Virus record (IMG/VR): IMGVR_UViG_3300043464_002284
Span: 124,001 to 188,000 of that record
DNA length: 64,000 bases
Direction: 5' to 3' (one strand)
Below, piece by piece: positions 9,413-26,565 of this stretch. Numbering within the stretch: the stretch's first letter is position 1; each line of letters opens with the position of its first letter. Made by a program: the position numbers and the translations under genes. The notes under the pieces were generated by a model. That model was not told the origin of the DNA, made no database searches, and was given only the letters and a program-made list of their open reading frames with translations.

Positions 9413-9490
9413 TAAAGCCTTATGCTATAAGGACTTACGACAAATCCGGCCCGCCCCTTTTGACGTAACTCCTTGATGCGTATATACTTA
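9413..9490. repeat. Double-palindrome element 2 (core inverted)
   Basis: Starts 9413/9466; core CCGGCCCGCCCC. Confidence 0.9.
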
Positions 9491-10117
9491 CAGCAAATAT
9501 AAAAAATATTATGTTTGGCATGAAATTATATTTCAAAAATCCAAAGATTTCCCTTGCAACGGTCGATACATACTGTATAATGAAAGCACAAGAGAACGAT
9601 AGGACAAAGGAAAAGAAAATGACCAACGTATCTTTCGACATGGTGATGGCTGGCGTTCGACAGGTGTTCGGCAAGGAATCGTATCGTGTTCGGGTCGTCC
9701 ACTCTGGTGCATATACGAAAGTCGAATCGAAGGATATGTTTCACTCTGTAACGATCAAGTCGAATGAGACGATCATGGAAAAGCTGAATGAGCTGTTCTA
9801 TGATGTGGTGTGTGAGGATTGTGCGTCGGGCATCTAGGCTTGACAACACCATAGCGTATACGGTATAATAGAACCAACACAAGAAAGAAAAGGAAAAAGA
9901 TGTTTCAGACCAACTATAAAACTGTGACGAATAACCTTGACAAGCTTTTCTCTGCTATGCGAGCTGGTAAGTATCACTGCGTGCTCGACCCAAGGGGTAA
10001 CGCTCATGTGGGCCTTATCAATGGTATCATGCGTGAAGATGGTAGCGGAAAGAATTGGATCGTAATAGTGACCAACCGTACAGTAAGCGAAAAGGTCTTC
10101 ATTCACGCCTCATGACC

Positions 10118-10195
10118 TAAAGCCTTACCCTATAAACACTTAGGGCGAGGCCGGGCGCCCGCATCTGATGTAAGTCCTTATCTCATATAGGCTTA
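10118..10195. repeat. Double-palindrome element 3
   Basis: Starts 10118/10171. Confidence 0.9.
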
Positions 10196-10237
10196 TGAAC
10201 CTTACGATATTGTAAGGAAGAAAACTATTGCTAGAGC

Positions 10238-10266
10238 TTGACGTTGGTCGATAATAGGTGTAGAAT
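10238..10266 (+). promoter_or_regulatory. Sigma70-type promoter with CGATA spacer motif
   Basis: TTGACG-TTGGTCGATAATAGGTG-TAGAAT. Confidence 0.8.
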
Positions 10267-10527
10267 AAGAACACAAGAAAGAAAAGGAATCCCAATGATT
10301 ACGACTATCGAATACGTTCAGTTGTTTGCCTTGATTGCTTTTGCTGGTTTCATCTCGTACACTGCCCACGAGGTGGGTAACGCTATTCAATCCATTCTTC
10401 ACGACTGAGGGAATATGTCTAGGTATCTGCCTGATGGTTATGTAGATTATGCTACATACAATATCAAAGAAGTTTTACAGTTTCTTCAACAATTACTAGG
10501 AATCATTAGCGAAAGCTGGTAAACAAA

Positions 10528-10845
10528 ATGACACACTTTGAAGCAGTAAAGATGGTTCGTGGTAAGACTAATAAGGATACTCGCAAGGTTGGCAACAATA
10601 CCTATGCGGAAATTCTTCCCGATGGTAGCGTAGGCATTATGCTGCATAGTACCTATGTGGTAAAGATTCATCCTGACAACTCTGCTACCCTCAATAGTGG
10701 GGGGTGGCATACTGCTACCACTAAGGATAGAATCAACCAGTATTCACCTGTACGGGTATATCAACGCAAGGGACAATGGTATCTGGAATGTGGTCTAGAG
10801 TATGAAGATGGTATGATTGTGGCCGATAATAACCTTATCTACTAA
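10528..10845 (+). CDS. Phage hypothetical protein
   Basis: GNNT...LHST...LNSGGWHTATTKDRIN motif seen in phage early hypothetical proteins. Confidence 0.6.
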   Translation: MTHFEAVKMVRGKTNKDTRKVGNNTYAEILPDGSVGIMLHSTYVVKIHPDNSATLNSGGWHTATTKDRINQYSPVRVYQRKGQWYLECGLEYEDGMIVADNNLIY

Positions 10846-11085
10846 GAAAGAAAAAAGATGAAAAACGTTTTTACCTTTACGATTGCTTGGGGCGTTTCAA
10901 TTTGTTTGCTTGTTGCAGTAATGCAGGCTACTGGTTTGGGGCATCCTAACTGTGAGCCTACTACTGTAGGATATGCTGAATTCTACGCTACACTGTTCGG
11001 ATGTTCAGTGCTCAGTTGTATACTAGGTATGGCTTGCCTTGGGCTGGTCGTTCTGGTATATCCACAAAAAACATAGCACTAGCCG

Positions 11086-11163
11086 TAAACCCTTGCTGCT
11101 AAAGGACTTAGGGCAAGGCGGGCGGGCCGGGATCGACGTAAGTCCTTATGGCGTATGCACTTA
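11086..11163. repeat. Double-palindrome element 4
   Basis: Starts 11086/11139; core GGCGGGCGGGCCGG. Confidence 0.9.
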
Positions 11164-11871
11164 CGACAACTTAGCAAATACTATGCCAATATCAAAGAAA
11201 ATGACGAAAAGTTTTGTCAAATTCTCTTGACATAAAAATATCCGGATTTCTCTTGAAAGCTCAAGATGAGCATGGTATAATGTCGATATAAGAGATAGAG
11301 AAGAAAGAAAGAGAGAGTTGAGATGGAAAAAGTTACGAGTGTGAATGGTTTCATTGCTTCGCTTCCCAAGATTCGGAAGCGTAAGATTTGGAGTGTGACG
11401 ATTGACGGAAAGATTGTTCAAGGCGTGAGTGCTGACGACAATCGTAAGGAAACTGCTGAAGCGTATATCGCCAGCAAGTATCCTGGTCAAGCTTTCACTC
11501 TCAAGTTTGTTGAGTGGAGAATCTGACCCCCATTAGAGGGGATTGACAAGCACAAAAACTTTGATAGAATACCAGAAAGAGAAAGAGAGAAAAGAATGTA
11601 CGAGATTGGCGACAGTGTGATGCTCAAGGGATTCGAGAAACAGATTGTTGGAAAGATTGTTTCCTACCACTATGATGAGGGAAATGTGTGGACGGTTAGG
11701 ATGCCCGGTGGGCAGCAATGGGATTTTGGCGACCATGAGCTTTCGCCCGCGGTTGATGCCTACGGACAACCCTGGACTTATCGACCCACCCATAGTGGGG
11801 GTTGATAGGCAAAAGAATTGTTGATAGAATCCACACACAAGAGAACGATAGACCTTAGAGAGAAAAAGAAA

Positions 11872-12252
11872 ATGAAAACCAAGTTCCCTATCATCGAAAA
11901 TGCCAAGCGTCAAGCCCGTATGATCTTCAAGGGTATCGCCGTGCCGATGCTCGTGGAAATCCCCGATGATAAGGTTGTGGATGATGTCGATTACGTTTAC
12001 GGTGTGACTGACCACAAGCGTTACGTCATGAGCGAAAAGGTTCTCAAGTTCAATCGTACCGCACTGAAGAACATTGGCAAGGTTCGCAAGGAAAAGGCTG
12101 ACCCCCGCTATGTGGGGGGTGAGGATACCATGATCGTTCCGGTTGGCAAGCCGGGAAGTCGTGAGCGTGTCGAGGAACTGACCAGACAGTATGCTGCCAT
12201 TGCTGCTTGTGGTGAAGAAATCAGCCCGTTCAGCTTCAAGAGTGATGAATAA
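11872..12252 (+). CDS. Hypothetical protein
   Basis: RBS; GC-richer codon usage. Confidence 0.65.
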   Translation: MKTKFPIIENAKRQARMIFKGIAVPMLVEIPDDKVVDDVDYVYGVTDHKRYVMSEKVLKFNRTALKNIGKVRKEKADPRYVGGEDTMIVPVGKPGSRERVEELTRQYAAIAACGEEISPFSFKSDE

Positions 12253-12287
12253 ACGCACACTACTGCACAAAGACATAGCAGTTGACC

Positions 12288-12365
12288 TAAAGCGTTACCC
12301 TATAAGGACTTAGGGCAAACGCGCCCGCCCTTATTTGACGTAAGTCTTTATGTCTCAACAACTTA
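12288..12365. repeat. Double-palindrome element 5 (core inverted)
   Basis: Starts 12288/12341; core GCGCCCGCCC. Confidence 0.9.
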
Positions 12366-12692
12366 CAACCTTACAACATTGTAAGGAAACTTTTCCTGCT
12401 CTAACCTGTTGACATTGGACGATAATAGAGGTATAATCGTAAGACAAGAGGGAGAGAATAAAGATGAAAGATATGAACACTCGTACAATGCAAGACATTC
12501 TGAGGAATACCCAGATCAAGCTGGAAACTTGCACAATTCCCGAAGTAAGGGATGGCTATAAGCTGCTGATCAGGCACCTTGCTAGTGAACTTCTGTTTAG
12601 GTATCGTCTAGCCAAATAGCCTAAAGTTTTGCATGGTAGAATGTCGATAATAGGTATAGGGAAAACGAGAACTAACAACAAAGAGGAAAAGT

Positions 12693-12896
12693 ATGGATAA
12701 TCTCACGTTGCCGCAGAGACATGATTGGGTAGCTTTTGACTATAAGGGTAAGAGTTTCAAGGGTGAAGTTCGTAGGGTTTACGATAAGCCCAAGGGTCAT
12801 TTGATGATTGTGAAATTGGGTGAGGGTAAGTATCGTTCGTGCTATCTTGAGCAGTGCGGGAATCTAACTGCTATCTCTACTCAACCGGAGGCTTGA
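12693..12896 (+). CDS. Small SH3/WYL-like beta protein
   Basis: VAFDYKG...GKYRSCYLEQC resembles the WYL F-x-Y...R-x-F-x-x-x-R pattern. Confidence 0.35.
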   Translation: MDNLTLPQRHDWVAFDYKGKSFKGEVRRVYDKPKGHLMIVKLGEGKYRSCYLEQCGNLTAISTQPEA

Positions 12897-13272
12897 ATAT
12901 GAGCGATTTTATTATGGTGTGGGTCTGGGTGGCGGTTATGTGTGGGGTTTTGTTCTTTGCTTATTTTCTCACTATTGTGGGAGAAGTTTGGCAGAGGATA
13001 AACGAGTATGAGAATATGCGGGCCAGGGGTTTTACTCTTATGAAGAATGATGAGGGTGATGATTTCTGGGTAGGATACGGGGATTGACCACTTAAACCAA
13101 AATGGAGATACAGGGATGTATCAGTTTGATTTTATTAGTGTGGCTTTTGGGTATATTGTTGGTATTATTCTGTATGCTAGTATGTCAAATATCATGTATA
13201 TGGAGGAAAATGATGAAAATCAGTGATTATGTTCTATTAGGGGTGTGCTTCATTCTAGGATGTGGCTTAACG

Positions 13273-13350
13273 TATCTCCTTCACCAGTAAGGACTTACGG
13301 CGAGTCCGGCCCGCCCCGCAAAGCGTAAGTCTTTATCTATCAACACTTTA
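13273..13350. repeat. Double-palindrome element 6 (core inverted; overlaps the end of a small ORF)
   Basis: Starts 13273/13326. Confidence 0.85.
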
Positions 13351-13414
13351 CGTCAACTGCAAAATTTTTTCTATTTGGCACGGAATTATATTCTGGAATT
13401 TTCCAAGTTACTGC

Positions 13415-13443
13415 TTGACACTGGCCGATAATAAGAGTATAAT
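13415..13443 (+). promoter_or_regulatory. Consensus sigma70 promoter with GCCGATA spacer motif
   Basis: TTGACA-CTGGCCGATAATAAGAG-TATAAT. Confidence 0.85.
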
Positions 13444-13720
13444 CGCAGCATCACGAACGGAAACCACAGGAACCAGAATCATGCTGAATTTCGACGAGAT
13501 CAATGCTATTCTGAACGACATGGCCGAAGCGGGAATTGTTGAGCCGATGGTTGAGCCTATCGACGACCCCAGTGTAGAAGTCAACTTTTGGGATTGGGCC
13601 GATGTTGTGGGTGCTATTGACGACTTTGTTCCAGAGGAGTATACTAATGCTTAGTGCGATTGCTTTTGTTGTCGGATACGTTGGCCTGTTTTACATCACC
13701 ACCATCGTGAGGGATTGACC

Positions 13721-13996
13721 ATGAGCTACGAGTATGATGATCTTGAAGACTTTTATGGTATCGACGCTGATGATCGTACTAACGATTATTGGGCTGGAGA
13801 TGATGACTTGGAGAATGATTCTAATGATTCGTTTGATGATAGTATGGATGGCGATGCTGAGTCTGCGTTGGCTTCCGCTGGATGGGGAACCGACGAGGAT
13901 TACGGTTACTATGGTGACGATGGAGTAGAAGATTTCCACGCCGATGAGGCTGTGGGATTTGTGGATTACAATGAAGACGGGCCATATAACGACTAA
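13721..13996 (+). CDS. Extremely acidic small protein (DNA-mimic candidate)
   Basis: About one third D/E, one Arg, no Lys, aromatic-rich. Confidence 0.65.
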   Translation: MSYEYDDLEDFYGIDADDRTNDYWAGDDDLENDSNDSFDDSMDGDAESALASAGWGTDEDYGYYGDDGVEDFHADEAVGFVDYNEDGPYND

Positions 13997-14012
13997 TTAA
14001 AAGGAAAGAACA

Positions 14013-14405
14013 ATGCAGTATCGAAAGATTGCGACGGGGATGATCGAAGCTACATATGAGAATTATTCACAGTGGCTAGAAGATGGTGTTCTGGCTGAAG
14101 AATTGAATAAGTATGAAATTCCAGTATGGAATGAAATGAACGATAGTACCAAGTGTTCTGCCATAGAATATGTTTATCTGAACCGAGATACTATTGAGCT
14201 ACATTCTGGACTTGTAGAATCATGGGTACAAGCTACGGCTTACTTTATGATCTATGATTTTGCTACTATCCTAGCACATGACGGAAATCCAGAAATCGAA
14301 ATTTTCTTTGATGATATGGATTTCATGATGGATGAAGATACCCTGAACGATGAAGATGTTCAGGAGCAACTTGGAATTAGTCCAGATTTTGGAGGAAAAT
14401 TCTAA
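14013..14405 (+). CDS. Acidic hypothetical protein
   Basis: AAGGAAAG RBS. Confidence 0.65.
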   Translation: MQYRKIATGMIEATYENYSQWLEDGVLAEELNKYEIPVWNEMNDSTKCSAIEYVYLNRDTIELHSGLVESWVQATAYFMIYDFATILAHDGNPEIEIFFDDMDFMMDEDTLNDEDVQEQLGISPDFGGKF

Positions 14406-14415
14406 GCACTCTCCG

Positions 14416-14493
14416 TAAACCCTTTGTGCATAAGCACTTAGGGCTGGCGGGGCGGGCCGATTTTGATGTAAGTCCTTATACCACAATACTTTG
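14416..14493. repeat. Double-palindrome element 7
   Basis: Starts 14416/14469. Confidence 0.9.
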
Positions 14494-14921
14494 CGACAAC
14501 CTTACGGTATTGCAAGGAGACATCCACTTGACATCTAAAGTTTCTCTGCTATACTTGTCGATATAAGAGATAGAGAAAGAGAGAGTGAAGAATGAGTAGG
14601 TATTACGAAGGTCGTTTCAACCCGTACAATCGTCATGATACGGGAATGTATGTGGTCTATCGCAAGAGCGACAACAAGCACCTTGGAACGGTTGTGGATT
14701 GTCGTAGTGAGAGCGAAGCCAAGCGCAAGGCTGGCTATGAGTTTGGTTGTGAGTGCTATGTGAGTGAAATTGAGGAATAAAATGAAAACGAAAAAGAAAG
14801 AGTTGACAGCACACCAGAAAGCTGTTATACTCATGAATCGTGAAGCTAGTCGTGCAGTGAATCGTGTGAAGATGTTGGAACAGTTGTATCTTGAAACCAT
14901 GAAAGCAAAGGAACTTGTTAA

Positions 14922-15152: not shown

Positions 15153-15171
15153 AAAAAATAATCTCTCGTCG

Positions 15172-15249
15172 TAAACCCTTTGTGCTCAAACACTTAGGGC
15201 CGACGCGGGGAGCCGGATTTGACGTAAGTCCTTATCTTGCATAGGGTTG
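15172..15249. repeat. Double-palindrome element 8
   Basis: Starts 15172/15225. Confidence 0.9.
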
Positions 15250-15330
15250 TGACGAAAGAGAATTTCTTACCGAATCTATTGACAATAGCCGATACTCCTG
15301 TAGAATGACTCAACCAAAGGAGGACAAGCT

Positions 15331-15876
15331 ATGTTCACGATGAAAGATTTGAGTCGTGTGCTTCCGGAACTCAAAGGATTGAAGCGGCCTGCTATTTTCT
15401 CTCCATCCAAGAGCGAATCAGCATATAAACTCTCTAAGATGGGGTCGCAGTTTCGTGGTCATGCAATTGAAAAGATGGTTAGGGATGGACTGCTGAAGAA
15501 GCACAAGACAAGCTATCATGGTGGATCTCATTCCCACGACATTACCTTGAATAAGGATGTTAGGATTGAAGTGAAATCAGCTTTAGCTACTCCTCTGGTT
15601 AGTAGCAGGACTAAGAAAATTACTAGATATAAATTTTCATTCAAGCATGTGCAATTGTCTAAGTTTGATATTCTTTTTCTGGTATATGTTACTCCTAATG
15701 GGCCTAAAGTCCGATGGATGACCAAAGCGACAGCGAGGGAGTTTGTTAGTAATCATCGTTCTAAGGCAAGCCATATCGATGTTACTACTTCTTCTTTTCG
15801 TAATCTTGAAGGAACAGCTTGGAAAAAGCTCAAGATGCCAGTAACGAAAAAGAAAAAGCAGAAAGCGAAAGCTTGA
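15331..15876 (+). CDS. PD-(D/E)XK nuclease-like protein
   Basis: RGHAIE...HDITL...RIEVKSA...FSF motif order; own promoter (15279-15306) and GGAGG RBS. Confidence 0.6.
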   Translation: MFTMKDLSRVLPELKGLKRPAIFSPSKSESAYKLSKMGSQFRGHAIEKMVRDGLLKKHKTSYHGGSHSHDITLNKDVRIEVKSALATPLVSSRTKKITRYKFSFKHVQLSKFDILFLVYVTPNGPKVRWMTKATAREFVSNHRSKASHIDVTTSSFRNLEGTAWKKLKMPVTKKKKQKAKA

Positions 15877-15878
15877 CG

Positions 15879-15955
15879 CAAGTCCTTGACTCCAAAGAAC
15901 TTGGGGCAAGGGCGGGCGCCCGGATTGTTATAACTCCTTATCGAATAAAGACTTA
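15879..15955. repeat. Double-palindrome element 9 (period 52)
   Basis: Starts 15879/15931. Confidence 0.85.
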
Positions 15956-16035
15956 CGAAAACCTTGCAATACTGAAAGATTCAAGTTCGCCCCTTGCATT
16001 TGCCGATAATATATGGTAGAATGAAGAGACGAGAA

Positions 16036-16628: not shown

Positions 16629-16664
16629 AAACTAGCAGTCTCTGCCTACTAACTGACCAACCCC

Positions 16665-16742
16665 TAACCCTTTGACACCAAAGGACTTAGGGTAAGGTCG
16701 GCCGCCCCGCTTCGTCGTAAGTCTTTATGCCCCAACACTTTA
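16665..16742. repeat. Double-palindrome element 10 (core inverted)
   Basis: Starts 16665/16718. Confidence 0.9.
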
Positions 16743-16826
16743 CGACAATTCTTTTTTGTTGAAGTTTTCCCTATTGACAAGCCGATAATAGTAGTGTAGA
16801 ATACAGGGAATCAAAAGGAGAAAAAG

Positions 16827-17273: not shown

Positions 17274-17539
17274 TAGTCGGGGCTTGACAAAGAGTCTTTA
17301 ATAGAGTATATTGGGCAGAAAGGGAGAGAATTATGTTGAATAATGATGAGCGTATGGCTGTTTGTGACTGTGTGGCTGATTTTTCTATTCGTCTGTTTCG
17401 TGCTGCTACTGTTGATGATCAAGCTGTTCATAATGAATTGGATATTTTTTATGAGTTCTTTTGTAGGGCTCTTGAGATTGCCAAGAGTGAGGGTGCGGTT
17501 AGGGTTCGTGAGTCTATTGGGGCTAGTAACAACTAATCG

Positions 17540-17617
17540 TAAGTCCTTATCCTTAAAGAACTTAGGGATAGGGCGGGCGGACGAATTTGATGTAAGTGCT
17601 TGTGTATCATAGGGTTA
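17540..17617. repeat. Double-palindrome element 11
   Basis: Starts 17540/17593. Confidence 0.9.
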
Positions 17618-17658
17618 TGTAAATGCTAAAAAATTTTTGGAATTCCTACAGAAGCCTC

Positions 17659-17687: not shown

Positions 17688-17695
17688 TAGCACAT

Positions 17696-18993: not shown

Positions 18994-19248
18994 ATGGAAT
19001 GGATTAGTTTCCACGGGCCTCGTCGCCCTATTAATGGACAAAAGATCATCTATTATGGTGAGGCTATTGGTGTGTGGCGTGGAAAGTATAGGATAAACTA
19101 TACTGACCCTTTTTGTATTCACAATATTGATTGTAGTGAAGCTCCCGGCAATGTAGACTATATGGATGCTCCATACTGGCAACCCGATGAGGGGCAACCA
19201 AAACCACCACCACCAGAACAGCCCTACCCACCAGATTATCCTAGTTGA
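18994..19248 (+). CDS. Hypothetical protein with Pro-rich tail
   Basis: ORF ends at element 12. Confidence 0.6.
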   Translation: MEWISFHGPRRPINGQKIIYYGEAIGVWRGKYRINYTDPFCIHNIDCSEAPGNVDYMDAPYWQPDEGQPKPPPPEQPYPPDYPS

Positions 19249-19250
19249 CA

Positions 19251-19328
19251 TAAGTCCTTGCTGCTAAAGAACTTAGCTCAAGGGCGGGCGGCCGGTTTCG
19301 ACGTAAGTCCTTATCTCTAAAGACTTTA
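19251..19328. repeat. Double-palindrome element 12
   Basis: Starts 19251/19304. Confidence 0.9.
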
Positions 19329-19408
19329 CGATTAGCAATATTTTTTCAAGATTTCCTCTTGACTTGTCGATAATAGTAGTGTAAGATAGTGGTAACACGA
19401 AAGGGAAT

Positions 19409-20160: not shown

Positions 20161-20503
20161 GTCGTTGAACATGATTGCAAATGGTTGCAGTCTCGATATG
20201 TTCGACAAGATTGTGACTTCGTTGGAAGTGGCATTGGGTGTGAACCAGCGTCGTAAGGTAACCATCACGGGTGGGATGACCACGGATAACCGTATCCGCT
20301 GCATCAAAGTCATCCGCGAACACACCGGATGGGGTTTGAAGGAGTCGAAGGATTGGACCGATGTTCTTGTTGGTCGCTACAACGAGAGCGGCTTTTGGAG
20401 TGGTGGTGGACACCCGAACACCATGACTCTGAAAACGCCGGAAGTGGCGGAGCAACTGCTGCGTGACCTGACCAGTCATGGTTGTGTGGGTTATCTCGTA
20501 TGA
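20132..20503 (+). CDS. Ribosomal protein bL12 (L7/L12) C-terminal-domain-like protein
   Basis: NRIRCIKVIREHTGWGLKESKDWTD matches the L12 CTD K-x-x-R-x-x-TGLGLKEAK signature. Confidence 0.7.
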   Translation: MIKIELSVRESLNMIANGCSLDMFDKIVTSLEVALGVNQRRKVTITGGMTTDNRIRCIKVIREHTGWGLKESKDWTDVLVGRYNESGFWSGGGHPNTMTLKTPEVAEQLLRDLTSHGCVGYLV

Positions 20504-20505
20504 CC

Positions 20506-20583
20506 TAAAGCCTTGTCCCTAAAGAACTTAGGGCGAGGCTGGGCGGCCGAATTTGATCTAAGTCCTTATCCCCAAACAACTTA
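20506..20583. repeat. Double-palindrome element 13
   Basis: Starts 20506/20559. Confidence 0.9.
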
Positions 20584-20786
20584 GGACAAAATCAAAAATC
20601 TTTGAGGCCCACTCAAGTTCCTGCTTGACAATGACGATACTATACTGTAGAATGAGAGTATCACAAGTCAAGACTCCGCGATGATGCCAACAAGAAAAAC
20701 CATCACGACGGACTTGACAAGTGGGTAACAGTAACGTATACTGATACTAGAACGATTGGAAACTGTAACATTTTTGGAGAAATGAA

Positions 20787-21047: not shown

Positions 21048-21062
21048 GTTAACAAAACTGGA

Positions 21063-21307
21063 CTATGCCAGTATAAAGGGCTAACGCCCCACCGATAAAT
21101 AGGTGAGATTTTAGGCATAGTGCGGCGGGGTCAAACCCGCGTAATGATAGTTCGTTGCAAGACTAAAAGGTGCAACTTAGAGGGTTTAACCAACCAGATA
21201 AGTCGGGTGGTTCCGTCGAAGTTATCGACCTCTAGAGTATATACTAATGACGATGGTAAGACGATAACGCCATCAAACCGTAATGCCTACATGGGACGCC
21301 ATGTGGG
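21063..21307 (+). ncRNA. Putative structured RNA upstream of tRNA-Arg
   Basis: Stems CTATGCC/GGCATAG, GCGGG/CCCGC, GTTGCA/TGCAAC, TAGAGG/CCTCTA, GATGG/CCATC, CCTACATGG/CCATGTGGG. Confidence 0.6.
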
Positions 21308-21344
21308 CTTGCGGCGTTGAGTGGGTACGATATAATAGAGAGAC

Positions 21345-21416
21345 GGCCCCATAGTTAAATGGATATAATAAGTGACTTCTAATCTCTAGTTGCAGGTTCG
21401 ATTCCTGCTGGGGCTA
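21345..21416 (+). tRNA. tRNA-Arg(TCT)
   Basis: Cloverleaf; loop CTTCTAA; T arm GCAGG-TTCGATT-CCTGC. Confidence 0.85.
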
Positions 21417-21421
21417 TTGTT

Positions 21422-21495
21422 GGGGGCGTAGATCAATTGGTTAGATCGCTAGCTTGTCACGCTAGAGGTTGCGGGTTCGAGTCCCGTCGCTCTCG
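21422..21495 (+). tRNA. tRNA-Asp(GTC)
   Basis: Cloverleaf; CTAGC-TTGTCAC-GCTAG. Confidence 0.92.
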
Positions 21496-21502
21496 TTTGT
21501 TG

Positions 21503-21580
21503 TAAACCCTTGCTACTAAAGCACTTAGAGCAAGTTCGCCGGGCCGGGGTCGTCGTAAGTCCTTATCTCACAAGGGTTTG
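21503..21580. repeat. Double-palindrome element 14 (directly after tRNA-Asp)
   Basis: Starts 21503/21556. Confidence 0.9.
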
Positions 21581-21660
21581 CATCAAGAATAATTTTGTGA
21601 AGTTTTTCGCTTGACGTTGCCGATACTATAGTGTAGAATCGGTAGACACAGGAGAAGAAC

Positions 21661-22365
21661 ATGAAAACTGCTGACGGTAATGATAAGTTGGGTAAGGGTT
21701 GTATTGTTGTGAGTCGTCCGGTTGGCGATACTTGCCCACCCGATTGCGATTATCTCGGAAACGGCTGCTATGCCGAAGCTACTGAAAACCAGTATAAAAA
21801 TGCTCGCACTGCCGGGTTTGCTAATATCATAACGGAAAAGAATAAAATCCGCTCTATGATTCTGGAAGCAAAGCGTCGTGAGAAGTCTATCCGTTGGCAT
21901 GAACGTGGCGACTGGTTTCTCAATGGCGAACTTGACCTAGACTATGTTGCGAATGTAACGTGGGCTTGTGAGAGTATTCTTGCCGATGGTGATACGTTGC
22001 CCGATATGTGGTTTTATACTCATATCTACGATTCTCGGCTTGTGAGTCTGGAAAAGTATATGAATGTATACGCTAGTGTGCATGATGATAACGATATGGG
22101 CGAAGCACTATCACAGGGTTTCAAGCTGTTCGCATGGTGTGACAGCGATATGAAGATTGCACCCAAGCGACCCAAGAGCAAGGCAAAGGCCGAAGCATGG
22201 CGACAAGCACTGCCGAAGCTGGTGGTTCTCAATGCGACAAAGTTTGTTGTGTGTCCAGAAATCCGTCGTGGTCGTTCGGAAATCACTTGCACTGGCACAA
22301 AAGATAGTATATCATGCGACTTGTGTGTGCGTGGTTTGGCTAATGTATTGTTTCCCGCACACTAA
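21661..22365 (+). CDS. Gp88-like Cys-motif phage protein
   Basis: TCPPDC...GCYA...IRWHERGD...FYTH pattern; C-terminal CP...C...C..C. Confidence 0.6.
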   Translation: MKTADGNDKLGKGCIVVSRPVGDTCPPDCDYLGNGCYAEATENQYKNARTAGFANIITEKNKIRSMILEAKRREKSIRWHERGDWFLNGELDLDYVANVTWACESILADGDTLPDMWFYTHIYDSRLVSLEKYMNVYASVHDDNDMGEALSQGFKLFAWCDSDMKIAPKRPKSKAKAEAWRQALPKLVVLNATKFVVCPEIRRGRSEITCTGTKDSISCDLCVRGLANVLFPAH

Positions 22366-22368
22366 ACC

Positions 22369-22446
22369 TAAGTCCTTGACCGTAAAGAACTTACGGCAAG
22401 GGCGAGCGGACGGATCGGTCGTAAGTCCTTGACTCATAAGACTTTA
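22369..22446. repeat. Double-palindrome element 15
   Basis: Starts 22369/22422. Confidence 0.9.
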
Positions 22447-22529
22447 GAGATTATTCAAGTTTCACTATTGCATTTGTCGATAAGATACTGTAGAATGGTG
22501 GAGTATCACCAACTTGGAAAGGGAAAGCT

Positions 22530-23096
22530 ATGAGCTATGTTGGATTGTATGATGACGCAGGAAGTAAGAACGCTTTCTACATTGTCAAAGATAAAAAGAT
22601 TGGCCGGAAGCGTGTGGGCTTCAAAGAGTTTGAAAATAAGCAAGAGGCAGAGTTTGCCCATCGGGTTCAAAAGCATCTGGCTCAGTTTGATTTGGCCCCT
22701 ATGGTATATGGGGATGTTGGTTTTATTCGTAGGCATGATGGTGAGTTGACTTGTTATGGTTATTTGACCGAAGTGGCTCGGCCTATGTCTGAATGTCATG
22801 ATGAAGATTGTGATGGTGAATGTTTTCGGAGCGAGTGTAAGAATGGTACTACTATCTCTGAACTAGTTTATGATTTGGGTGAACATGGCTTAGAGTATAA
22901 CGATGCCCATAAGGGTAATTTTGGTTATGTTCGACGTAAGGGTTCATGGGTTCCGGTTGCTATCGACCTTGGAATCGAGAGCTTTACTGATTGGGATGAA
23001 GATATTTATGGAAAGTTTGATTATGCTGCTGACGAGTTTGATGACTATGGACGATGCAATTGTGTTCAATGCAAAAAGTTCCGAGAGGAAGAATAA
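22530..23096 (+). CDS. Protein-kinase-like (ePK/APH fold) protein
   Basis: LAPMVYG, DAHKGNFG (HxxN), AIDLG (DxG); C-terminal CxCxxC. Confidence 0.6.
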   Translation: MSYVGLYDDAGSKNAFYIVKDKKIGRKRVGFKEFENKQEAEFAHRVQKHLAQFDLAPMVYGDVGFIRRHDGELTCYGYLTEVARPMSECHDEDCDGECFRSECKNGTTISELVYDLGEHGLEYNDAHKGNFGYVRRKGSWVPVAIDLGIESFTDWDEDIYGKFDYAADEFDDYGRCNCVQCKKFREEE

Positions 23097-23499
23097 TGAG
23101 CAAATACTATATCAAGTGTGGAACACTAGAATTAATTTATTCCTGCAACAAATGTCCACGGGATGCTGCGATGGATGCTATTTGGGAAACAAATGAAAAT
23201 GATACACTAGATGAGCATTTCTATATAGATGAGCGTGGATATAAAGACTATACAAATGCTGATGGATTAACTTGTGTGTTACATACTAGCCACATTCTAA
23301 AAGATGCCGGATGGAGTATTGAATAATGTGGACAAAAATAGACGATAAAAAAGTAAGACACTTATGGGAATGTGCTGATTGTGATAATCTAGTTTATGTT
23401 GAACCTTGGTTCTATTCCGAAAATGGCGAACCCTTTTGCACAAAGTGTGAGAGGGATATGGAGTATATTCGAACAGAAGTGGATATGTAACACTTTCCG

Positions 23500-23577
23500 C
23501 AAACCCTTGCTGCGTAAGCACTTAGGGTGAGCGGGGGCGGCCGGATTTGACGTAAGTTGTTGCAGGATGCGGACTTA
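23500..23577. repeat. Double-palindrome element 16
   Basis: Starts 23500/23553. Confidence 0.9.
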
Positions 23578-23615
23578 GAGAAATTCCAGAAAACTCCTAA
23601 AGTTTAGGGTGGTGA

Positions 23616-24029
23616 TTGGTCGATAATAAGGATATGAGAACGAGACGAGAATCAACAAGGGGTGAGAGAATGATCCAGTGGGTTGGGATTGTGATTACGA
23701 TTTTGGGTCTGGCGTATACGGGTGTGAAGGACTACCAGAAAGGGGACATAAAATTTCCCAAGATGCCTCAAAAACAGGTCTTGACAAAGGTAGTTTATCC
23801 GATACAATACTGTCTGATGGCTTACGATCCTAACATTGATAGAATTTTTTACCTACACGAAAATGGAATATGGTATGATTACGCTCCACAACAACGACGA
23901 TATTCGACCACGCCGCAACCATATCAAGCTCAAGGTGCGACCGCAGTGGCAGGTTCCTACGGGTCACAAGGAACACCGGCATACCGTTATGGACAATCGC
24001 CCCAAGCGTCAGCGAACCCGATCCGCTGA
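23616..24029 (+). CDS. Membrane-anchored hypothetical protein
   Basis: TM helix WVGIVITILGLAY. Confidence 0.55.
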   Translation: MVDNKDMRTRRESTRGERMIQWVGIVITILGLAYTGVKDYQKGDIKFPKMPQKQVLTKVVYPIQYCLMAYDPNIDRIFYLHENGIWYDYAPQQRRYSTTPQPYQAQGATAVAGSYGSQGTPAYRYGQSPQASANPIR

Positions 24030-24079
24030 AAATCGTAGGGCTTGCGAGAATGGGGACTATTGAGTATAATTAGTAGTAT

Positions 24080-24152
24080 GCCAGTGTAGCTCAGTCAGCA
24101 GAGCGTCAAATTTGTAATTTGAATGTCGCGGGTGCAACTCCTGCCACTGGCT
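24080..24152 (+). tRNA. tRNA-Thr(TGT)
   Basis: GCCAGTG/CACTGGC acceptor; TCAAA-TTTGTAA-TTTGA; atypical D and T loops. Confidence 0.8.
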
Positions 24153-24218
24153 TTATGAGTCGAAAGAAAAAACGTATGTAAACGCTCTATCTGGTGTATA
24201 TATTCGTATCCAGAGGAG

Positions 24219-24746
24219 ATGTCTATGATTGTAAAATGTAGTTGCTGTAATAAAGAGTTTAATAAGCAGAAGTGCGAGGTAATTAAGTCAAAAAATAATT
24301 ACTGCTCACGTTCCTGTGCAGCAAAAATAAACAATAGGTTATTTAAAAAGAGAAACAAAAAAGTTAGACATTGTAGGAACTGTAAGATTGAAATTATTGG
24401 CAAGGGAAAACTTTATTGTAGTATTAAATGTCAAAATGTTTTTCAGTCAGAAATAAAGATAAAGTCATGGCAGCTAGGAATGGACGATGGATACGAAACT
24501 AATGGAACAGTAAGGAGATATATAAAAAAATTCTTACTGGAAAAAAGAGGTCAGAAATGTGAGGAGTGTGGTTGGAATAAAATTAATCCAAATACCAATA
24601 AGTGTCCATTGGAAATACATCATAGGGATGGAAATTATAAAAATAATATAGAAGAAAACTTACAAATACTATGTCCGAATTGCCATTCATTGACAGATAC
24701 ATATAAGAATATGAACAAAGGTAATGGTAGAGAATGCAGAAGATGA
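24219..24746 (+). CDS. HNH endonuclease inserted in the tRNA cluster
   Basis: CEECG...LEIHHRDG...NN...NLQILCPNCH; N-terminal CSxxC repeats. Confidence 0.88.
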   Translation: MSMIVKCSCCNKEFNKQKCEVIKSKNNYCSRSCAAKINNRLFKKRNKKVRHCRNCKIEIIGKGKLYCSIKCQNVFQSEIKIKSWQLGMDDGYETNGTVRRYIKKFLLEKRGQKCEECGWNKINPNTNKCPLEIHHRDGNYKNNIEENLQILCPNCHSLTDTYKNMNKGNGRECRR

Positions 24747-24817
24747 TCCGGGATGGTGAAATGGTATCACAGCAGACTTTGGATCTGCGTTTCTACGTTC
24801 AAGTCGTAGTCCCGGAA
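24747..24817 (+). tRNA. tRNA-Gln(TTG)
   Basis: TCCGGGA/TCCCGGA; GCAGA-CTTTGGA-TCTGC. Confidence 0.9.
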
Positions 24818-24821
24818 TTAT

Positions 24822-24893
24822 TGGCGAGTAGCACAACGGTTGTGCAAGCGGCTGTTAACCGCTAGGTTACAGGTTCGAATCCTGTCTCGCCAG
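24822..24893 (+). tRNA. tRNA-Asn(GTT)
   Basis: TGGCGAG/CTCGCCA; AGCGG-CTGTTAA-CCGCT. Confidence 0.9.
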
Positions 24894-24898
24894 CTTGA

Positions 24899-24985
24899 GG
24901 AAGAATGGCAGAGTGGTCTAATGCATCTGATTACTAATCAGAAGAAGCGTAAAAACTTCCGTGGGTTCGAATCCTACTTCTTCCG
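24899..24985 (+). tRNA. tRNA-Ser(ACT)
   Basis: GGAAGAA/TTCTTCC, G73, long variable arm, TCTGA-TTACTAA-TCAGA. Confidence 0.85.
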
Positions 24986-24988
24986 CTC

Positions 24989-25070
24989 GGTAGATTACTC
25001 AAGTGGACAACGAGGGCAGACTGTAAATCTGCTGGCATTGCCTTCGCTGGTTCGAATCCAGCATCTACCA
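24989..25070 (+). tRNA. tRNA-Tyr(GTA)
   Basis: GGTAGAT/ATCTACC; GCAGA-CTGTAAA-TCTGC; long variable arm. Confidence 0.92.
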
Positions 25071-25071
25071 C

Positions 25072-25149
25072 TAAGTTGTTGGTATGAAAGGACTTAGGAC
25101 AAATTCGGCGGGCCGCGTTCGACGTAAGTGATTACAGAGTAACGACTTA
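25072..25149. repeat. Double-palindrome element 17 (directly after tRNA-Tyr)
   Basis: Starts 25072/25125. Confidence 0.9.
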
Positions 25150-25234
25150 GGATTTGTTTAAAGTTTGTTCTTGACAGCTGCCGATAACTAGTGTATGATT
25201 GCTAATCGGAGGCTGATGTTTGAGTTGCGAGTGC

Positions 25235-25306
25235 GGCCCCATAGTATAGTAGTTAGTACGCTGGCCTTTCACGCCGGAGACCTGGGAGCGTAACCCAGTG
25301 GGGTCA
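25235..25306 (+). tRNA. tRNA-Glu(TTC), atypical T loop
   Basis: GGCCCCA/TGGGGTC; CTGGC-CTTTCAC-GCCGG; T loop AGCGTAA. Confidence 0.75.
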
Positions 25307-25307
25307 T

Positions 25308-25357
25308 TTGTTTCTGCTAATCCTACGGATTTGGAAGTTGTGGAAGTAGTCAGCGAG
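25308..25357 (+). repeat. 50-bp ungapped motif, copy 2 (immediately after tRNA-Glu)
   Basis: TTGTTTCTGCTAATCCTACGGATTTGG...TAGTCAGCGAG. Confidence 0.85.
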
Positions 25358-25613
25358 AATTTCTAAACATTTGCCTCTTGACAAGCCGATAATGGTATGG
25401 TAGACTATTGGAATAAGAAAGGAACCTAAGATGAAGAACCTTCGCATCTATGATATTGTGACCGAGGACGGTCAAACCCTGGCTGACATTCAACTCTCTA
25501 TGCAAGAGGATTTTGATTGGGCTGATGTTTTTGATAAGCTCTATGATTTTACCACAGAAAACGTCCAAAGTTATTCCTACCAAGAAATTACCGTACAAAC
25601 TGAATAACTAGAT

Positions 25614-25686
25614 GGGCCTTTAGCTCAATTGGCAGAGCAAGGAGCTTTTAACTCTTAGGTTCGGGGTTCGAGTCCCCGAGGGCCCA
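25614..25686 (+). tRNA. tRNA-Lys(TTT)
   Basis: GGGCCTT/AGGGCCC; AGGAG-CTTTTAA-CTCTT. Confidence 0.92.
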
Positions 25687-25740
25687 CTTGACAATGGTTG
25701 GTTGTTGGTGTAGAATATGGGTAAGAAAGGGAGTAGAAAT

Positions 25741-25917
25741 ATGAGATATGAAGATTATTATGATGGCTACAACTATGACTATGATGAATTGGTAGAAAAT
25801 ACCGAGGATCTTGGTCTGGATGAAGAACCTTGGATGAATGATATTGAGGAAGAAGATGACGAGGTTCCATCTTACGGTAAGAATTATTATCCAAGTATTG
25901 AAGATGAAGATGAATAA
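25741..25917 (+). CDS. Very acidic small protein
   Basis: D/E/Y-rich; RBS GGGAG. Confidence 0.6.
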   Translation: MRYEDYYDGYNYDYDELVENTEDLGLDEEPWMNDIEEEDDEVPSYGKNYYPSIEDEDE

Positions 25918-25922
25918 TTTTT

Positions 25923-26003
25923 GTGTGTGCTTCTAGGTGGGACTAGAACCTTTTCTTTATTCCTTTCTTATAATGGGCTGTTGGTTCAAATCCAACCACA
26001 CAC
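25923..26003 (+). pseudogene. tRNA-like element with degenerate anticodon arm
   Basis: GTGTGTG/CACACAC acceptor; GTTGG-TTCAAAT-CCAAC T arm; TTCTAG/CTAGAA D-like arm; pyrimidine tract in place of the anticodon arm. Confidence 0.55.
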
Positions 26004-26006
26004 TTT

Positions 26007-26513
26007 ATGAACGCTTGGCAACAAGAGCTTGATGACTTCCGGCGTACCCCAGATGGTAAGATTATCCAAGGTGCTGCTCACACTAGCCGAGTATTAAATC
26101 ACAAATATCGGAATGGTGTGATTATCAAGGCTGTTTGTTCTCTGCGTAAAATTGAGAATAATTTCGATAGCATTGCTTGTTGTGGCGTAAGTGGTTTGAT
26201 GGTAGTGCCACAGATTGCAGAGATTCTCAATAAGAATATTATAGTTGTTCGTAAGGATGAAAAGCGATATAGCGAATTCTTTCTTGAGGGTGTCTCTCCG
26301 TCTCGATATATTATTGTAGATGATTTGATCTGTTCTGGAAATACTCTTAAGCATATTATTGCTAGTATTTCTGATGATACTCCAAGAGCAAAGTGTATCG
26401 GGGCGTACTTCTATCTCGGTGAGGAATGTTCTTTCAATGCTTCCACCGATTCTAAATTTTTTGAGAAGCAGTTTGGGACGATTATCCTAAACCCTTACCA
26501 GCCAAAGACTTAG
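26007..26513 (+). CDS. Type I phosphoribosyltransferase-family protein
   Basis: PRPP-binding motif IIVDDLICSGNT. Confidence 0.8.
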   Translation: MNAWQQELDDFRRTPDGKIIQGAAHTSRVLNHKYRNGVIIKAVCSLRKIENNFDSIACCGVSGLMVVPQIAEILNKNIIVVRKDEKRYSEFFLEGVSPSRYIIVDDLICSGNTLKHIIASISDDTPRAKCIGAYFYLGEECSFNASTDSKFFEKQFGTIILNPYQPKT

Positions 26514-26565
26514 GACGAATCCGGACGCCCCGGCCAGCCGTAAGTCCTTATCCTGAAACAACTTA
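26488..26565. repeat. Double-palindrome element 18 (core inverted; overlaps the PRTase 3' end)
   Basis: Starts 26488/26541. Confidence 0.9.

What the first reader, a model, noticed from the sequence alone, without database searches (positions are those of the whole stretch)
9413..26565. The GC-rich core flips orientation between copies while flanking genes do not
Seen: the asymmetric core reads GGCGGGCCG-like in copies 4, 7, 11, 12, 16 and 17, and as its reverse complement (CGGCCCGCCC-like) in copies 2, 5, 6, 10 and 18. All surrounding genes stay on the + strand. Inference: function is orientation-independent, which argues for DNA rather than transcript action, or the core is or was inverted by recombination between the flanking palindromes as a micro-invertible switch next to each promoter.
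Basis: partly seen in the sequence, partly recalled or inferred. Interest (0 to 1): 0.6.

Follow-up and report, generated by a model that had tools for sequence, protein, structure and literature searches.

The report
Phage intergenic palindrome with flippable GC spacer
An uncultivated 238-kb lake phage carries 19 copies of a ~90-bp four-box palindromic DNA element between its small early genes. The GC-rich middle of the element does occur in both orientations, but it looks like an orientation-neutral spacer that was inverted rarely in the past, not a working genetic switch.

Summary
The window holds 19 copies of a ~90-bp intergenic element (8.5-27.8 kb) and the rest of the genome holds none. 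GGCGGGCCG-type cores read forward in some copies and as the reverse complement in others, while the boxes, promoters, tRNAs and genes keep + polarity.

In about 420 copies from related lake phages, a motif-plus-reverse-complement model fits far better than column-shuffled controls. Only the 19-nt spacer between the inner inverted boxes flips.

An active switch is not supported:
- The genome has no tyrosine recombinase, serine recombinase or Y1 transposase.
- Contigs from four lake samples (2016-2024) carry identical cores at copies 5, 6, 8 and 9.
- Close orthologues keep the orientation.
- Mixed orthologue groups inspected so far show recombination junctions inside the element, not in-place inversion.

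Function looks DNA-level. Base pairing shows no covariation, and the -35 hexamer lies at quantised distances of about 110, 121, 131.5, 142.5 and 154, a period of roughly 11 bp. The element starts at the upstream stop codon, and homology breakpoints cluster there.

My best reading is a PeSL-like junction and regulatory module whose GC core is a fixed-length, orientation-neutral spacer. The bound protein and any effect on transcription are inferred, not shown.

The parts
8486..8585 (+). Element copy 1. The core is degenerate (ATCGGATGCCCG) and its orientation cannot be called.
9402..9501 (+). Element copy 2. Core reversed (CCGGCCCGCCCC), P(forward)=0.03. The flipped spacer is about 9443-9461.
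10107..10206 (+). Element copy 3. Near-palindromic core GGCCGGGCGCCCGC with forward-type flanks. The stop codon TGA of the upstream ORF lies at 10113-10115, inside the element.
11075..11174 (+). Element copy 4. Core forward (GGCGGGCGGGCCGGG).
12277..12376 (+). Element copy 5. The GC cluster is reversed (CGCGCCCGCCC) but the A/T flanks are forward-type, so the copy is chimeric.
13262..13361 (+). Element copy 6. Core reversed (CCGGCCCGCCCCGC), the exact reverse complement of copy 7 over 13 nt.
14405..14504 (+). Element copy 7. Core forward (GGCGGGGCGGGCCG).
15161..15260 (+). Element copy 8. Core forward (GCGGGGAGCCGG).
15868..15967 (+). Element copy 9. Near-palindromic core GGGCGGGCGCCCGG. The stop codon TGA of ORF 15331-15876 lies inside the element.
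16654..16753 (+). Element copy 10. The GC cluster is reversed (CGGCCGCCCCGC), but the mixture model is ambiguous (0.42).
17529..17628 (+). Element copy 11. Core forward.
19240..19339 (+). Element copy 12. Core forward. The stop codon TGA of ORF 18994-19248 lies inside the element.
20495..20594 (+). Element copy 13. Core forward. All 21 members of its orthologue group are forward.
21492..21591 (+). Element copy 14. Core ambiguous (CGCCGGGCCGGGG). It follows tRNA-Asp.
22358..22457 (+). Element copy 15. Core forward.
23489..23588 (+). Element copy 16. Core forward.
25061..25160 (+). Element copy 17. The GC cluster is forward (GGCGGGCCG) with reversed-type flanks (AAATTC), so the copy is chimeric. 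It follows tRNA-Tyr.
26477..26576 (+). Element copy 18. Core reversed (CCGGACGCCCCGGCC).
27686..27785 (+). Element copy 19. Near-palindromic, forward-type core. A canonical intrinsic terminator at 27645-27677 precedes it.
27845..27880 (+). Half-element: a single box pair (one 29-bp palindrome) just downstream of a promoter.
28009..28045 (+). Half-element directly upstream of a TGGTATACT extended -10 box.
28559..28594 (+). Half-element directly upstream of CCGATA-TGGTATACT.
10238..10266 (+). Example of the downstream sigma70-like promoter (TTGACG-17-TAGAAT). Its -35 hexamer lies at model distance 132 from copy 3. Similar promoters follow most copies, for example at 12409, 13415, 14528, 15279, 16774, 17659, 20625, 21611, 25171, 26596 and 27810.

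Best explanation
The repeats are a family of ~90-bp intergenic junction modules of an uncultivated lineage of freshwater jumbo phages.

Each module is a large imperfect DNA dyad. It has two 29-bp palindromes of the form CGTAAGTCCTT-N7-AAGGACTTACG, which give four TAA-N4-TTA boxes. The palindrome centres lie 53 bp apart, and a GC-rich spacer of fixed length separates them.

The module begins at or within a few bases of the stop codon of the upstream small gene. An A/T tract and a strong sigma70-type early promoter follow it, at a distance that comes in steps of about 11 bp.

I infer that the boxes are bound as double-stranded DNA by a dyad-symmetric protein of the phage or the host, not identified here. 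This protein would sit on one face of the helix relative to RNA polymerase at the next promoter and modulate or insulate it.

Because the same 90 bp recur every ~1 kb, the modules also serve as homology patches where promoter-plus-ORF cassettes are exchanged, as PeSLs do in T4-type phages.

The GC core would be a spacer constrained in length, G+C content and a small central palindrome (GGCnnGCC), but not in strand orientation. The reversed form would then arise from rare inversion of the spacer between the inner inverted boxes, by hairpin- or template-switch-type events that need no recombinase. It is then inherited and spread by duplication and cassette exchange.

Shown: the anatomy, the fixed box polarity, the flipped segment, its heritability, the absence of recombinases, the absence of covariation, the helical phasing, and the junctions at the elements. 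Inferred: protein binding, any effect on transcription, and the mechanism of inversion.
For: - Anatomy and restriction to one 20-kb array.
- Family: about 420 copies in 118 loci of related IMG/VR contigs, several of 229-244 kb.
- Fixed spacer: 27 nt between the inner boxes in 322 of 358 copies. 377 of 420 copies are ungapped against the 100-column model.
- Flipped segment: columns 42-60 flip, while columns 37, 39 and 64 stay. The mixture gain is 86.7 lnL against 0.3 in shuffles.
- Both orientations coexist under independently verified polarity: 122 forward, 39 reverse and 58 ambiguous among 219 copies with positive flank skew and a downstream promoter.
- Heritable: core identity rises with box identity, while reverse-complement identity stays at background. 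18 of 24 orthologue groups do not contain both clearly forward and clearly reverse members.
- Junctions inside elements in several of the mixed groups. HSP ends are enriched about 4-fold at the element start.
- DNA-level action: 72% of cells pair, but shuffles give 73%, so there is no covariation. Folding energies are equal on the two strands.
- Phasing: -35 distances peak at 110, 120/121, 131/132, 142/143 and 154. This holds in 51 independent linker clusters, with resultant 0.63 at a period of 10.8-11 and Rayleigh p of about 2e-9.
- The stop codon sits at model position 7, 6, 0 or 12.
- A canonical terminator is present in addition to copy 19.
- No recombinase. Cores are identical in contigs of four lake runs.
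- PeSL precedent: PMC2839356 and PMC4122927.
- Hairpin-associated minute inversions: PMC12371153, citing Kelchner and Wendel 1996.
Against: - No binding protein is identified, and the phage encodes no HU/IHF-like protein.
- The distance classes could partly reflect descent from a few paralogous linker types, although linkers within a class are largely unrelated in sequence.
- If inversion used the 9-bp box arms, columns 37, 39, 62 and 64 should sometimes flip too, and they do not. So either crossovers are confined to 1-3 bp next to the spacer, or selection restores the arms, or the asymmetric core has a function of its own.
- No clean in-place inversion between close orthologues was found, so no inversion event is observed directly.
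- No RNA data exist for this phage, so an additional role in the transcript cannot be excluded.
Confidence: 0.5

Rival explanations
1. The element acts in the transcript. It would be a 3'-end hairpin set that terminates, attenuates or stabilises the upstream mRNA, or an RNase III-type processing site, like the stem-loop of PeSLs or the T7 early intergenic sites. The core would be a loop whose sequence does not matter.
For: - The element starts at the upstream stop codon.
- The array has no excess of canonical terminators: 14 found against 15.4 expected.
- Copies 2, 6 and 13 fold better than shuffles, with z of -2.2 to -3.3.
- The box polarity is fixed relative to transcription.
- PeSL stem-loops are proven terminators.
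Against: - There is no covariation in any of the tested pairings.
- Mismatches inside the helices are frequent: A.C, C.A and C.C at columns 15-17/31-33 and 70-71/83-84.
- No U tract follows the element.
- Fold z-scores are near 0 for copies 4, 12 and 18.
- The + and - strands fold equally well.
- A transcript role would not require helical phasing to the next promoter.
- Copy 19 is preceded by a separate canonical terminator.
Confidence: 0.2
2. The asymmetric core is itself a functional site that works in either orientation. It could be the preferred crossover or nicking point of a still unrecognised recombination protein. That would make the array an integron-like cassette system without a classical integrase.
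For: - The GGCGGGC 7-mer occurs in 96 of 322 cores and its complement in 37.
- The reversed profile mirrors the forward one in exact register.
- Crossovers map inside or next to the core in mixed orthologue groups.
- The PeSL authors speculated that GGGG...CCCC and GGGC motifs are recombination targets.
- The layout resembles attC: outer and inner inverted boxes, a variable centre, and a position at the 3' end of each ORF.
Against: - No integrase, resolvase or HUH enzyme is present.
- Cores are highly variable, with a few hundred different sequences.
- Crossovers in a GC-rich shared patch are also expected from ordinary homologous recombination.
Confidence: 0.15
3. The core is an active micro-invertible switch next to each promoter.
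For: Inverted boxes flank the flipped 19 nt, and both states exist among copies.
Against: - No site-specific recombinase is found in a complete genome.
- Cores are identical in contigs from four lake samples taken between 2016 and 2024.
- Orientation is stable among orthologues.
- The flipped piece carries no promoter or coding part, and the promoter lies 50-100 bp further on.
Confidence: 0.03
4. Whole elements are mobile MITE-like insertions that landed in either orientation, and the near-symmetry of the boxes hides this.
For: The element is a quasi-palindrome, and whole copies align to each other in reverse at 70-75% (I1-I9).
Against: - Asymmetric box columns (37, 39, 64, 74, 75) and the outer boxes do not flip with the core.
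- Box polarity follows transcription in about 90% of copies.
- No transposase is present.
- No copies occur elsewhere in the genome or in bacterial chromosomes.
Confidence: 0.02

Closest known systems
PeSLs (promoter-early stem-loops) of T4-type phages: 'mobile regulatory cassettes' (Arbiol et al. 2010, PMC2839356; Comeau et al. 2014, PMC4122927)
   Same: - It is an intergenic composite repeated between small, mostly ORFan early genes.
- A dyad element rich in G and C runs is followed by an A/T-rich tract, a near-consensus sigma70 promoter, an SD and an ATG.
- Breakpoints between related phages fall at the repeats.
   Different: - The element is far larger and more ordered: four conserved boxes in two 29-bp palindromes plus a fixed 27-nt GC spacer, rather than a short G(n)-loop-C(n) hairpin.
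- There is no evidence that it terminates transcription.
- Its distance to the promoter follows the helical repeat.
- The phage is not demonstrably T4-like. It has direct terminal repeats, and its ligase is at most 33% identical to that of any cultured phage.
Minute inversions of hairpin loops in chloroplast non-coding DNA (Kelchner and Wendel 1996, as cited in PMC12371153)
   Same: A short spacer (4-50 bp) lying exactly between two inverted arms occurs in both orientations, and no recombinase is involved.
   Different: In plastids the flips recur among close relatives. Here the orientation is stable among orthologues and varies mainly among paralogous copies.
Integron attC sites and cassette arrays (for example Vibrio VCRs)
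   Same: - The repeat is an imperfect dyad with outer and inner inverted boxes and a variable centre.
- It sits right after the stop codon of each of many co-oriented small ORFs.
- The spacing is 0.7-1.7 kb.
   Different: - There is no IntI.
- The box sequences are unrelated to RYYYAAC/GTTRRRY.
- Every cassette has its own promoter.
- The centre has a fixed length.
REP/BIME and Correia-type intergenic palindromic repeats of bacteria
   Same: These are extragenic palindromic units arranged in pairs around a linker. Some carry an IHF-type YAA-N4-TTR word, as all four boxes do here.
   Different: - The element is found only in phage contigs.
- There is no RAYT transposase.
- The polarity is fixed.
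- The element is coupled to a promoter.
Phase-locked upstream activator or architectural sites of strong promoters (Fis at rrn P1, CRP class I, IHF). This comparison rests on my own knowledge.
   Same: Dyad sites lie upstream of an UP-like A/T tract, at distances from the promoter that differ by whole helical turns.
   Different: The binding factor is unknown, and the site is four boxes spread over 80 bp. No experiment exists.

Membership tests
PeSL-type regulatory cassette | Intergenic composite of a dyad or stem-loop, an A/T-rich tract, a sigma70-like early promoter and an SD | tested here: met
   225 of 337 copies have a promoter matching at least 10 of 12 positions within 160 nt downstream.
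PeSL-type regulatory cassette | Concentrated in a hyperplastic region of small genes of unknown function | tested here: met
   All 19 copies lie in one 20-kb array. Most array ORFs have no Pfam or PHROG hit.
PeSL-type regulatory cassette | Insertions, deletions and replacements between related phages break at the repeats | tested here: met
   HSP ends are enriched about 4-fold at the element start. Junctions lie inside elements in mixed orthologue groups.
PeSL-type regulatory cassette | The stem-loop is an effective transcription terminator | tested here: inconclusive
   There is no U tract, no covariation and weak fold z-scores. No RNA runs exist.
PeSL-type regulatory cassette | Mini-circles form by recombination between neighbouring repeats | not testable with these tools
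   This needs inverse PCR or raw long reads. Only assembled contigs were served.
PeSL-type regulatory cassette | The host phage belongs to the T4-like myoviruses | tested here: inconclusive
   The PF07068 search found nothing, but its control rang nowhere either. The genome has direct terminal repeats.
Invertible DNA switch (fim, hin, inverton type) | A site-specific tyrosine or serine recombinase is encoded by the replicon | tested here: not met
   PF00589 and PF00239 are absent from six-frame searches of the complete record, and the controls were positive.
Invertible DNA switch (fim, hin, inverton type) | Inverted repeats bound the invertible segment | tested here: met
   The ACTTA..C and G..TAAGT boxes flank columns 42-60.
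Invertible DNA switch (fim, hin, inverton type) | Both orientations are present at one locus within a population | tested here: inconclusive
   Contigs of four runs show one orientation and no strand-change joints, but contigs drop rare variants.
Invertible DNA switch (fim, hin, inverton type) | The inverted segment carries a promoter or a coding part whose direction matters | tested here: not met
   The flipped piece is a 19-nt GC spacer, and the promoter lies 50-100 bp downstream and never flips.
Integron attC / cassette array | An IntI integrase is present | tested here: not met
Integron attC / cassette array | An imperfect dyad of R''-L''...L'-R' type with a variable centre follows each ORF | tested here: met
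   in form only. The box sequences differ from the attC consensus.
REP/BIME | Associated RAYT (Y1 transposase) and chromosomal spread | tested here: not met
   PF01797 is absent. In genome contigs, real copies occur only on phage-like contigs inside bins.
Intrinsic terminator | A GC-rich hairpin followed at once by a U tract | tested here: not met
   The consensus after box 4 is ACAAATTAA. The scan found no elements as terminators apart from a reverse-strand artefact in copy 9.
Hairpin-loop minute inversion | The inverted segment equals the spacer between the two inverted arms | tested here: met
Hairpin-loop minute inversion | Recurrent flips occur among close relatives | tested here: not met

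The most novel reading that the evidence does not exclude
The four-box dyad and its GC core could be the cis-site of an unrecognised phage system. In it, one protein would both organise a phased nucleoprotein complex upstream of every early promoter and catalyse or target the exchange of promoter-ORF cassettes at the core. That would be a phage 'integron without an integrase', in which the core orientation records the strand on which past exchanges were resolved.
Probability: 0.1. Interest if true: 0.8.

Novelty: new variant of a known kind. Interest (0 to 1): 0.5.

Why it matters
Large uncultivated phages carry long arrays of small early genes of unknown function, and how these arrays are regulated and reshuffled is poorly understood.

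This element family gives a precise and easily recognised landmark for cassette boundaries in a widespread freshwater jumbo-phage lineage. It extends the PeSL idea beyond T4-type phages.

The helical phasing to the promoter makes a concrete and testable prediction: a DNA-binding factor acts on the boxes.

A motif found in both orientations between inverted repeats need not be a switch. Here it behaves as a neutral spacer state that is inherited stably.

Tried and rejected
- Rfam scan of 8-29 kb at E<=1: only tRNAs and chance hits, and no family for the element.
- Megablast of the array against 50,697 phage records: only one 63-bp hit.
- G-quadruplex idea: a G3x4 motif occurs in only 12 of 345 copies.
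- Hairpin H1 (tail of box 1 pairing with the left flank of the core): this looked compensatory by eye in window copies, but over the family pairing equals the expectation from column composition, 0.57 against 0.56.
- Mutual information over all column pairs: the strongest signals are same-letter couplings inside the core (G/G against C/C), not Watson-Crick pairs.
- Strand asymmetry of folding energy: none.
- Phage-encoded HU/IHF (PF00216): absent.
- Scan of bacterial and archaeal genomes for the element, to find a host: mostly chance single hits. Real copies occur only on short contigs binned into unrelated MAGs.
- A first ungapped PSSM test of 'whole element against core only' was misleading, because the core columns included non-flipping flanks. 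It was replaced by the mixture model.
- Apparent exact inversion between orthologues of copy 13 (L027 against L038): it reduces to two symmetric G-to-C differences in a near-palindromic 12-mer, so it is not proof of an inversion event.
- The Gp23 search was uninformative because its control failed.
- The search for homologous proteins, the large representative search, structure prediction and complex prediction were not used. No claim here rests on them.

Full report
**Source and context.** The window is bases 124,001-188,000 of a 237,915-bp IMG/VR virus record with direct terminal repeats, rated complete. It comes from lake water. Near-identical DNA is held by contigs of many lake and freshwater metagenome runs from 2016 to 2024. 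No cultured phage is close: megablast finds one 63-bp hit, and the ATP-dependent DNA ligase is at most 33% identical to that of any phage record.

Window 8-28 kb is an array of small + strand ORFs, ten tRNA genes and many near-consensus sigma70-type promoters, all on +. Its G+C content is 42-48%, against 32-37% elsewhere in the window. Most array ORFs have no Pfam or PHROG family.

**The repeat.** The repeat finder returns a 16-copy family of 86 nt. A printed register and an nhmmer search of the whole genome give 19 full copies, all between window 8486 and 27785. There are three half-copies just downstream and none elsewhere in the 238 kb.

Several of these contigs are 229-244 kb long and share 80-93% identical segments with the array.

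The 100-column consensus reads:

TTGAC GTAAaCCCTT - N7 - AAGGACTTAGGGC - aAG - [GC core] - TTTGAC GTAAGTCCTTA - N7 - CAAcgACTTACGAC

- Seven columns are invariant in 110 diverse copies (A13, T34, T35, A66, A67, T87, T88) and 13 more are at least 90% conserved.
- Each of the four boxes is itself a small palindrome, TAA-N4-TTA.
- Boxes 1+2 and boxes 3+4 form two 29-bp palindromes whose centres are 53 bp apart.
- The whole element is an imperfect dyad about column 50.5, and the centre of the core is itself palindromic. G47-C54 pair in 83% of copies and G48-C53 in 74%.
- The spacer between the inner boxes is 27 nt in 322 of 358 copies.

- Exact GGCGGGCCG is on + in copies 4, 7 and 17 and on - in copies 2 and 6.
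- With one mismatch allowed there are 16 hits against 1.5 expected, most of them in cores.
- Copy 6 is the reverse complement of copy 7 over 13 nt, in exact register about the dyad.

Over the family, I fitted a mixture of one position matrix and its reverse complement about the dyad (columns 43-58). It improves the log-likelihood by 86.7 units, against 0.3 +/- 0.6 when columns are shuffled. Of 345 unique copies, 206 are forward, 58 reverse and 81 ambiguous.

I then restricted the count to 219 copies whose polarity is fixed independently, by positive flank GC skew and a strong promoter downstream. That gives 122 forward, 39 reverse and 58 ambiguous.

Within the window:
- clearly reverse: copies 2, 6 and 18;
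- clearly forward: copies 3, 4, 7, 8, 11, 12, 13, 15, 16 and 19;
- chimeric, with the GC cluster and its A/T flanks disagreeing: copies 5 and 17;
- ambiguous: copies 10 and 14.

**What flips.** Comparing the profile of the reverse class with the forward profile and with its reverse complement shows that columns 42-60 flip. The asymmetric columns of the inner boxes (37, 39, 64) and of the right spacer (74, 75) do not flip.

The idea that whole quasi-palindromic elements were inserted both ways is rejected. The boxes have a fixed polarity relative to transcription:
- 368 of 419 copies agree with the flank GC skew.
- Among copies with a strong promoter on one side only, 258 agree and 27 disagree. 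The disagreeing copies have nearly equal scores on the two strands.

**Is it a switch?** Four lines of evidence argue against one.

1. Six-frame searches of the complete genome find no tyrosine recombinase, no serine recombinase and no Y1 transposase, with positive controls.
2. Only Logan contigs, not raw reads, were available. Laid on window 11000-16900, which respects the 6-kb limit, contigs of four runs span copies 5, 6, 8 and 9 with 0-1 differing letters, and no strand-change joint is listed. The four runs include three that are not the likely source sample. This shows that the dominant sequence is the same across samples and years. It cannot exclude rare variants.
3. Among pairs of copies with similar boxes, direct identity of the core rises with box identity, from 12.6 of 19 at 75% to 17 of 19 at 95%. 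Reverse-complement identity stays at background, about 7 of 19. Almost none of the 646 pairs at 75% or above match better in reverse.
4. I grouped copies by the upstream gene. Of 24 groups with three or more members, 18 do not contain both clearly forward and clearly reverse members. In several of the six mixed groups, the differing members keep the left half of the element but have a different core, right half and downstream sequence. This holds for the copy 5, copy 6 and copy 19 groups. The change of orientation there comes with a recombination junction inside the element, not an in-place inversion.

I did not observe a single clean inversion event. The one candidate reduces to two symmetric substitutions in a near-palindromic 12-mer.

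**RNA or DNA?** I tested three pairings: the two-hairpin structure, the single long hairpin, and a hairpin seen by eye in window copies.

- About 72% of cells form standard pairs. Shuffling the 3' letters among sequences gives 73%, and the covariation score is below the shuffled mean.
- The helices contain frequent A.C, C.A and C.C cells.
- No U tract follows the element.
- Fold z-scores range from 0 to -3.3.
- The two strands fold equally well.

The palindromy is therefore kept as sequence, as in dyad protein sites, and not through compensatory change.

A second, positive argument is the spacing to the next promoter. The first base of the -35 hexamer lies at model distance 110, 120/121, 131/132, 142/143 or 154, with almost nothing in between. 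After collapsing the linkers into 51 clusters of unrelated sequence the peaks remain. The resultant is 0.63 at a period of 10.8-11 bp, with a Rayleigh p of about 2e-9. Linkers within one class are largely non-homologous beyond a shared A/T tract.

The two 29-bp palindromes are themselves 53 bp apart, which is five turns. A transcript-level element has no reason to be in helical phase with the next promoter.

Finally, copy 19 is preceded by a textbook intrinsic terminator. The phage does use ordinary terminators, and it places the element in addition to one.

**Junction role.** The stop codon of the upstream ORF most often lies at model position 7 (the TGA of TTGAC, 57 cases), or at 6, 0, -1 or 12. 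The element carries stop codons in all three frames.

Ends of homology between the window and its relatives pile up within 20 nt of the element start: 58 of 376 ends in 3.9% of the length. Mixed orthologue groups show crossovers in or next to the core.

This is the behaviour described for PeSLs of T4-type phages. Those are composite stem-loop plus sigma70 promoter cassettes in hyperplastic regions that mediate modular shuffling, with G- and C-run stem-loops.

**Best explanation.** The element is a DNA-level junction and regulatory module. Its four boxes would be bound by a dyad-symmetric protein in helical register with the downstream early promoter. Its repetition provides homology for cassette exchange.

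The GC core would be a spacer constrained in length (phasing of the two palindromes), G+C content and a small central palindrome, but not in orientation. A non-palindromic GC centre would also make a long quasi-palindrome harder to extrude as a cruciform or hairpin; this last point is my inference.

The reversed state is best explained by rare inversion of the spacer between the inner inverted boxes, as known for minute hairpin-loop inversions in plastid DNA. It would then be inherited and spread among paralogues.

One weakness is that the mismatched arm columns never flip with the core. So crossovers would have to lie within 1-3 bp of the spacer, or selection restores the arms, or the asymmetric core has a function of its own that works both ways (rival 2).

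**What could not be done.** There are no raw reads and no RNA runs for this phage, and no host is known. The binding factor is unknown, and the phage has no HU/IHF homologue.

Noticed in passing
window 10238-10266, 12409-12437, 16774-16802, 20625-20653, 26596-26624 and relatives: The promoter spacers carry a conserved CGATAAT / CCGATA word 6-7 nt after the -35 hexamer. A second promoter type (9074, 11260, 12621, 14535) reads TGGTATAAT-GTCGATATAAGAGA, with the same word after the -10. This may be a second regulatory site or a start-site motif.
   Followed up: partly
window 8615-8632, 9039-9056, 10200-10217, 12369-12386, 14500-14517: Five CCTTRC-N6-GYAAGG mini-palindromes, with 0 expected by chance. 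Those at 10200, 12369 and 14500 lie just downstream of elements 3, 5 and 7, ahead of the next promoter. They reuse the words of the boxes in the opposite order.
   Followed up: partly
window 27645-27677: A canonical intrinsic terminator (GCCGCCAC...GTGGCGG followed by TTCTTTTT) lies after the DUF932 gene 26641-27618 and directly before element copy 19.
   Followed up: yes
window 27845-27880, 28009-28045, 28559-28594: Single half-elements, each one 29-bp palindrome. Two of them sit about 10 nt upstream of TGGTATACT extended -10 boxes, as if one palindrome could replace a -35 region.
   Followed up: partly
window 18178-18250 and 24899-24986: Rfam finds a weak tRNA (37.8 bits) at 18178-18250 that ARAGORN does not report. 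ARAGORN assigns the unusual anticodon ACT to the tRNA-Ser at 24899-24986.
   Followed up: no
window 8000-28000: The early-gene array is 42-48% G+C against 32-37% in the rest of the window. The GC cores and tRNAs explain only part of this.
   Followed up: no
window 24219-24746: An HNH-endonuclease-like ORF (PHROG 1271, E=2e-19) lies inside the tRNA cluster.
   Followed up: no
relatives, model column 57 (e.g. L100:5159, L106:6088, L109:11128): The word GCGAAGC, known as an unusually stable DNA mini-hairpin, sits at the right edge of the core in 13 reverse-core copies and in no forward-core copy.
   Followed up: partly
L141, L210, L124, L234, L223, L231 (genome contigs): Real copies of the element occur on short contigs binned into unrelated MAGs (Planktophila, Alphaproteobacteria, Planctomycetaceae, Cytophagales, Bathyarchaeia). 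These are probably phage contigs caught in bins and give no host clue.
   Followed up: partly
window 4866-6677, 6775-8385, 46057-47043, 53866-55110, 55662-57017, 20039-20503: Auxiliary genes in the window: a GlmS-like amidotransferase, a subtilase, the UV endonuclease UvdE, a DUF1501 protein and an ATP-dependent DNA ligase. An array ORF also has a weak, sub-threshold match to the ribosomal L7/L12 C-terminal domain.
   Followed up: no
window 11000-16900 in runs X1, X3, X4, X6: Assembled contigs of the lake runs break or branch at the elements, with loose ends at 11108, 11147, 13288, 14469 and 15213. This is expected for a 90-bp repeat, and it means that metagenome assemblies of such arrays may be chimeric.
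   Followed up: partly
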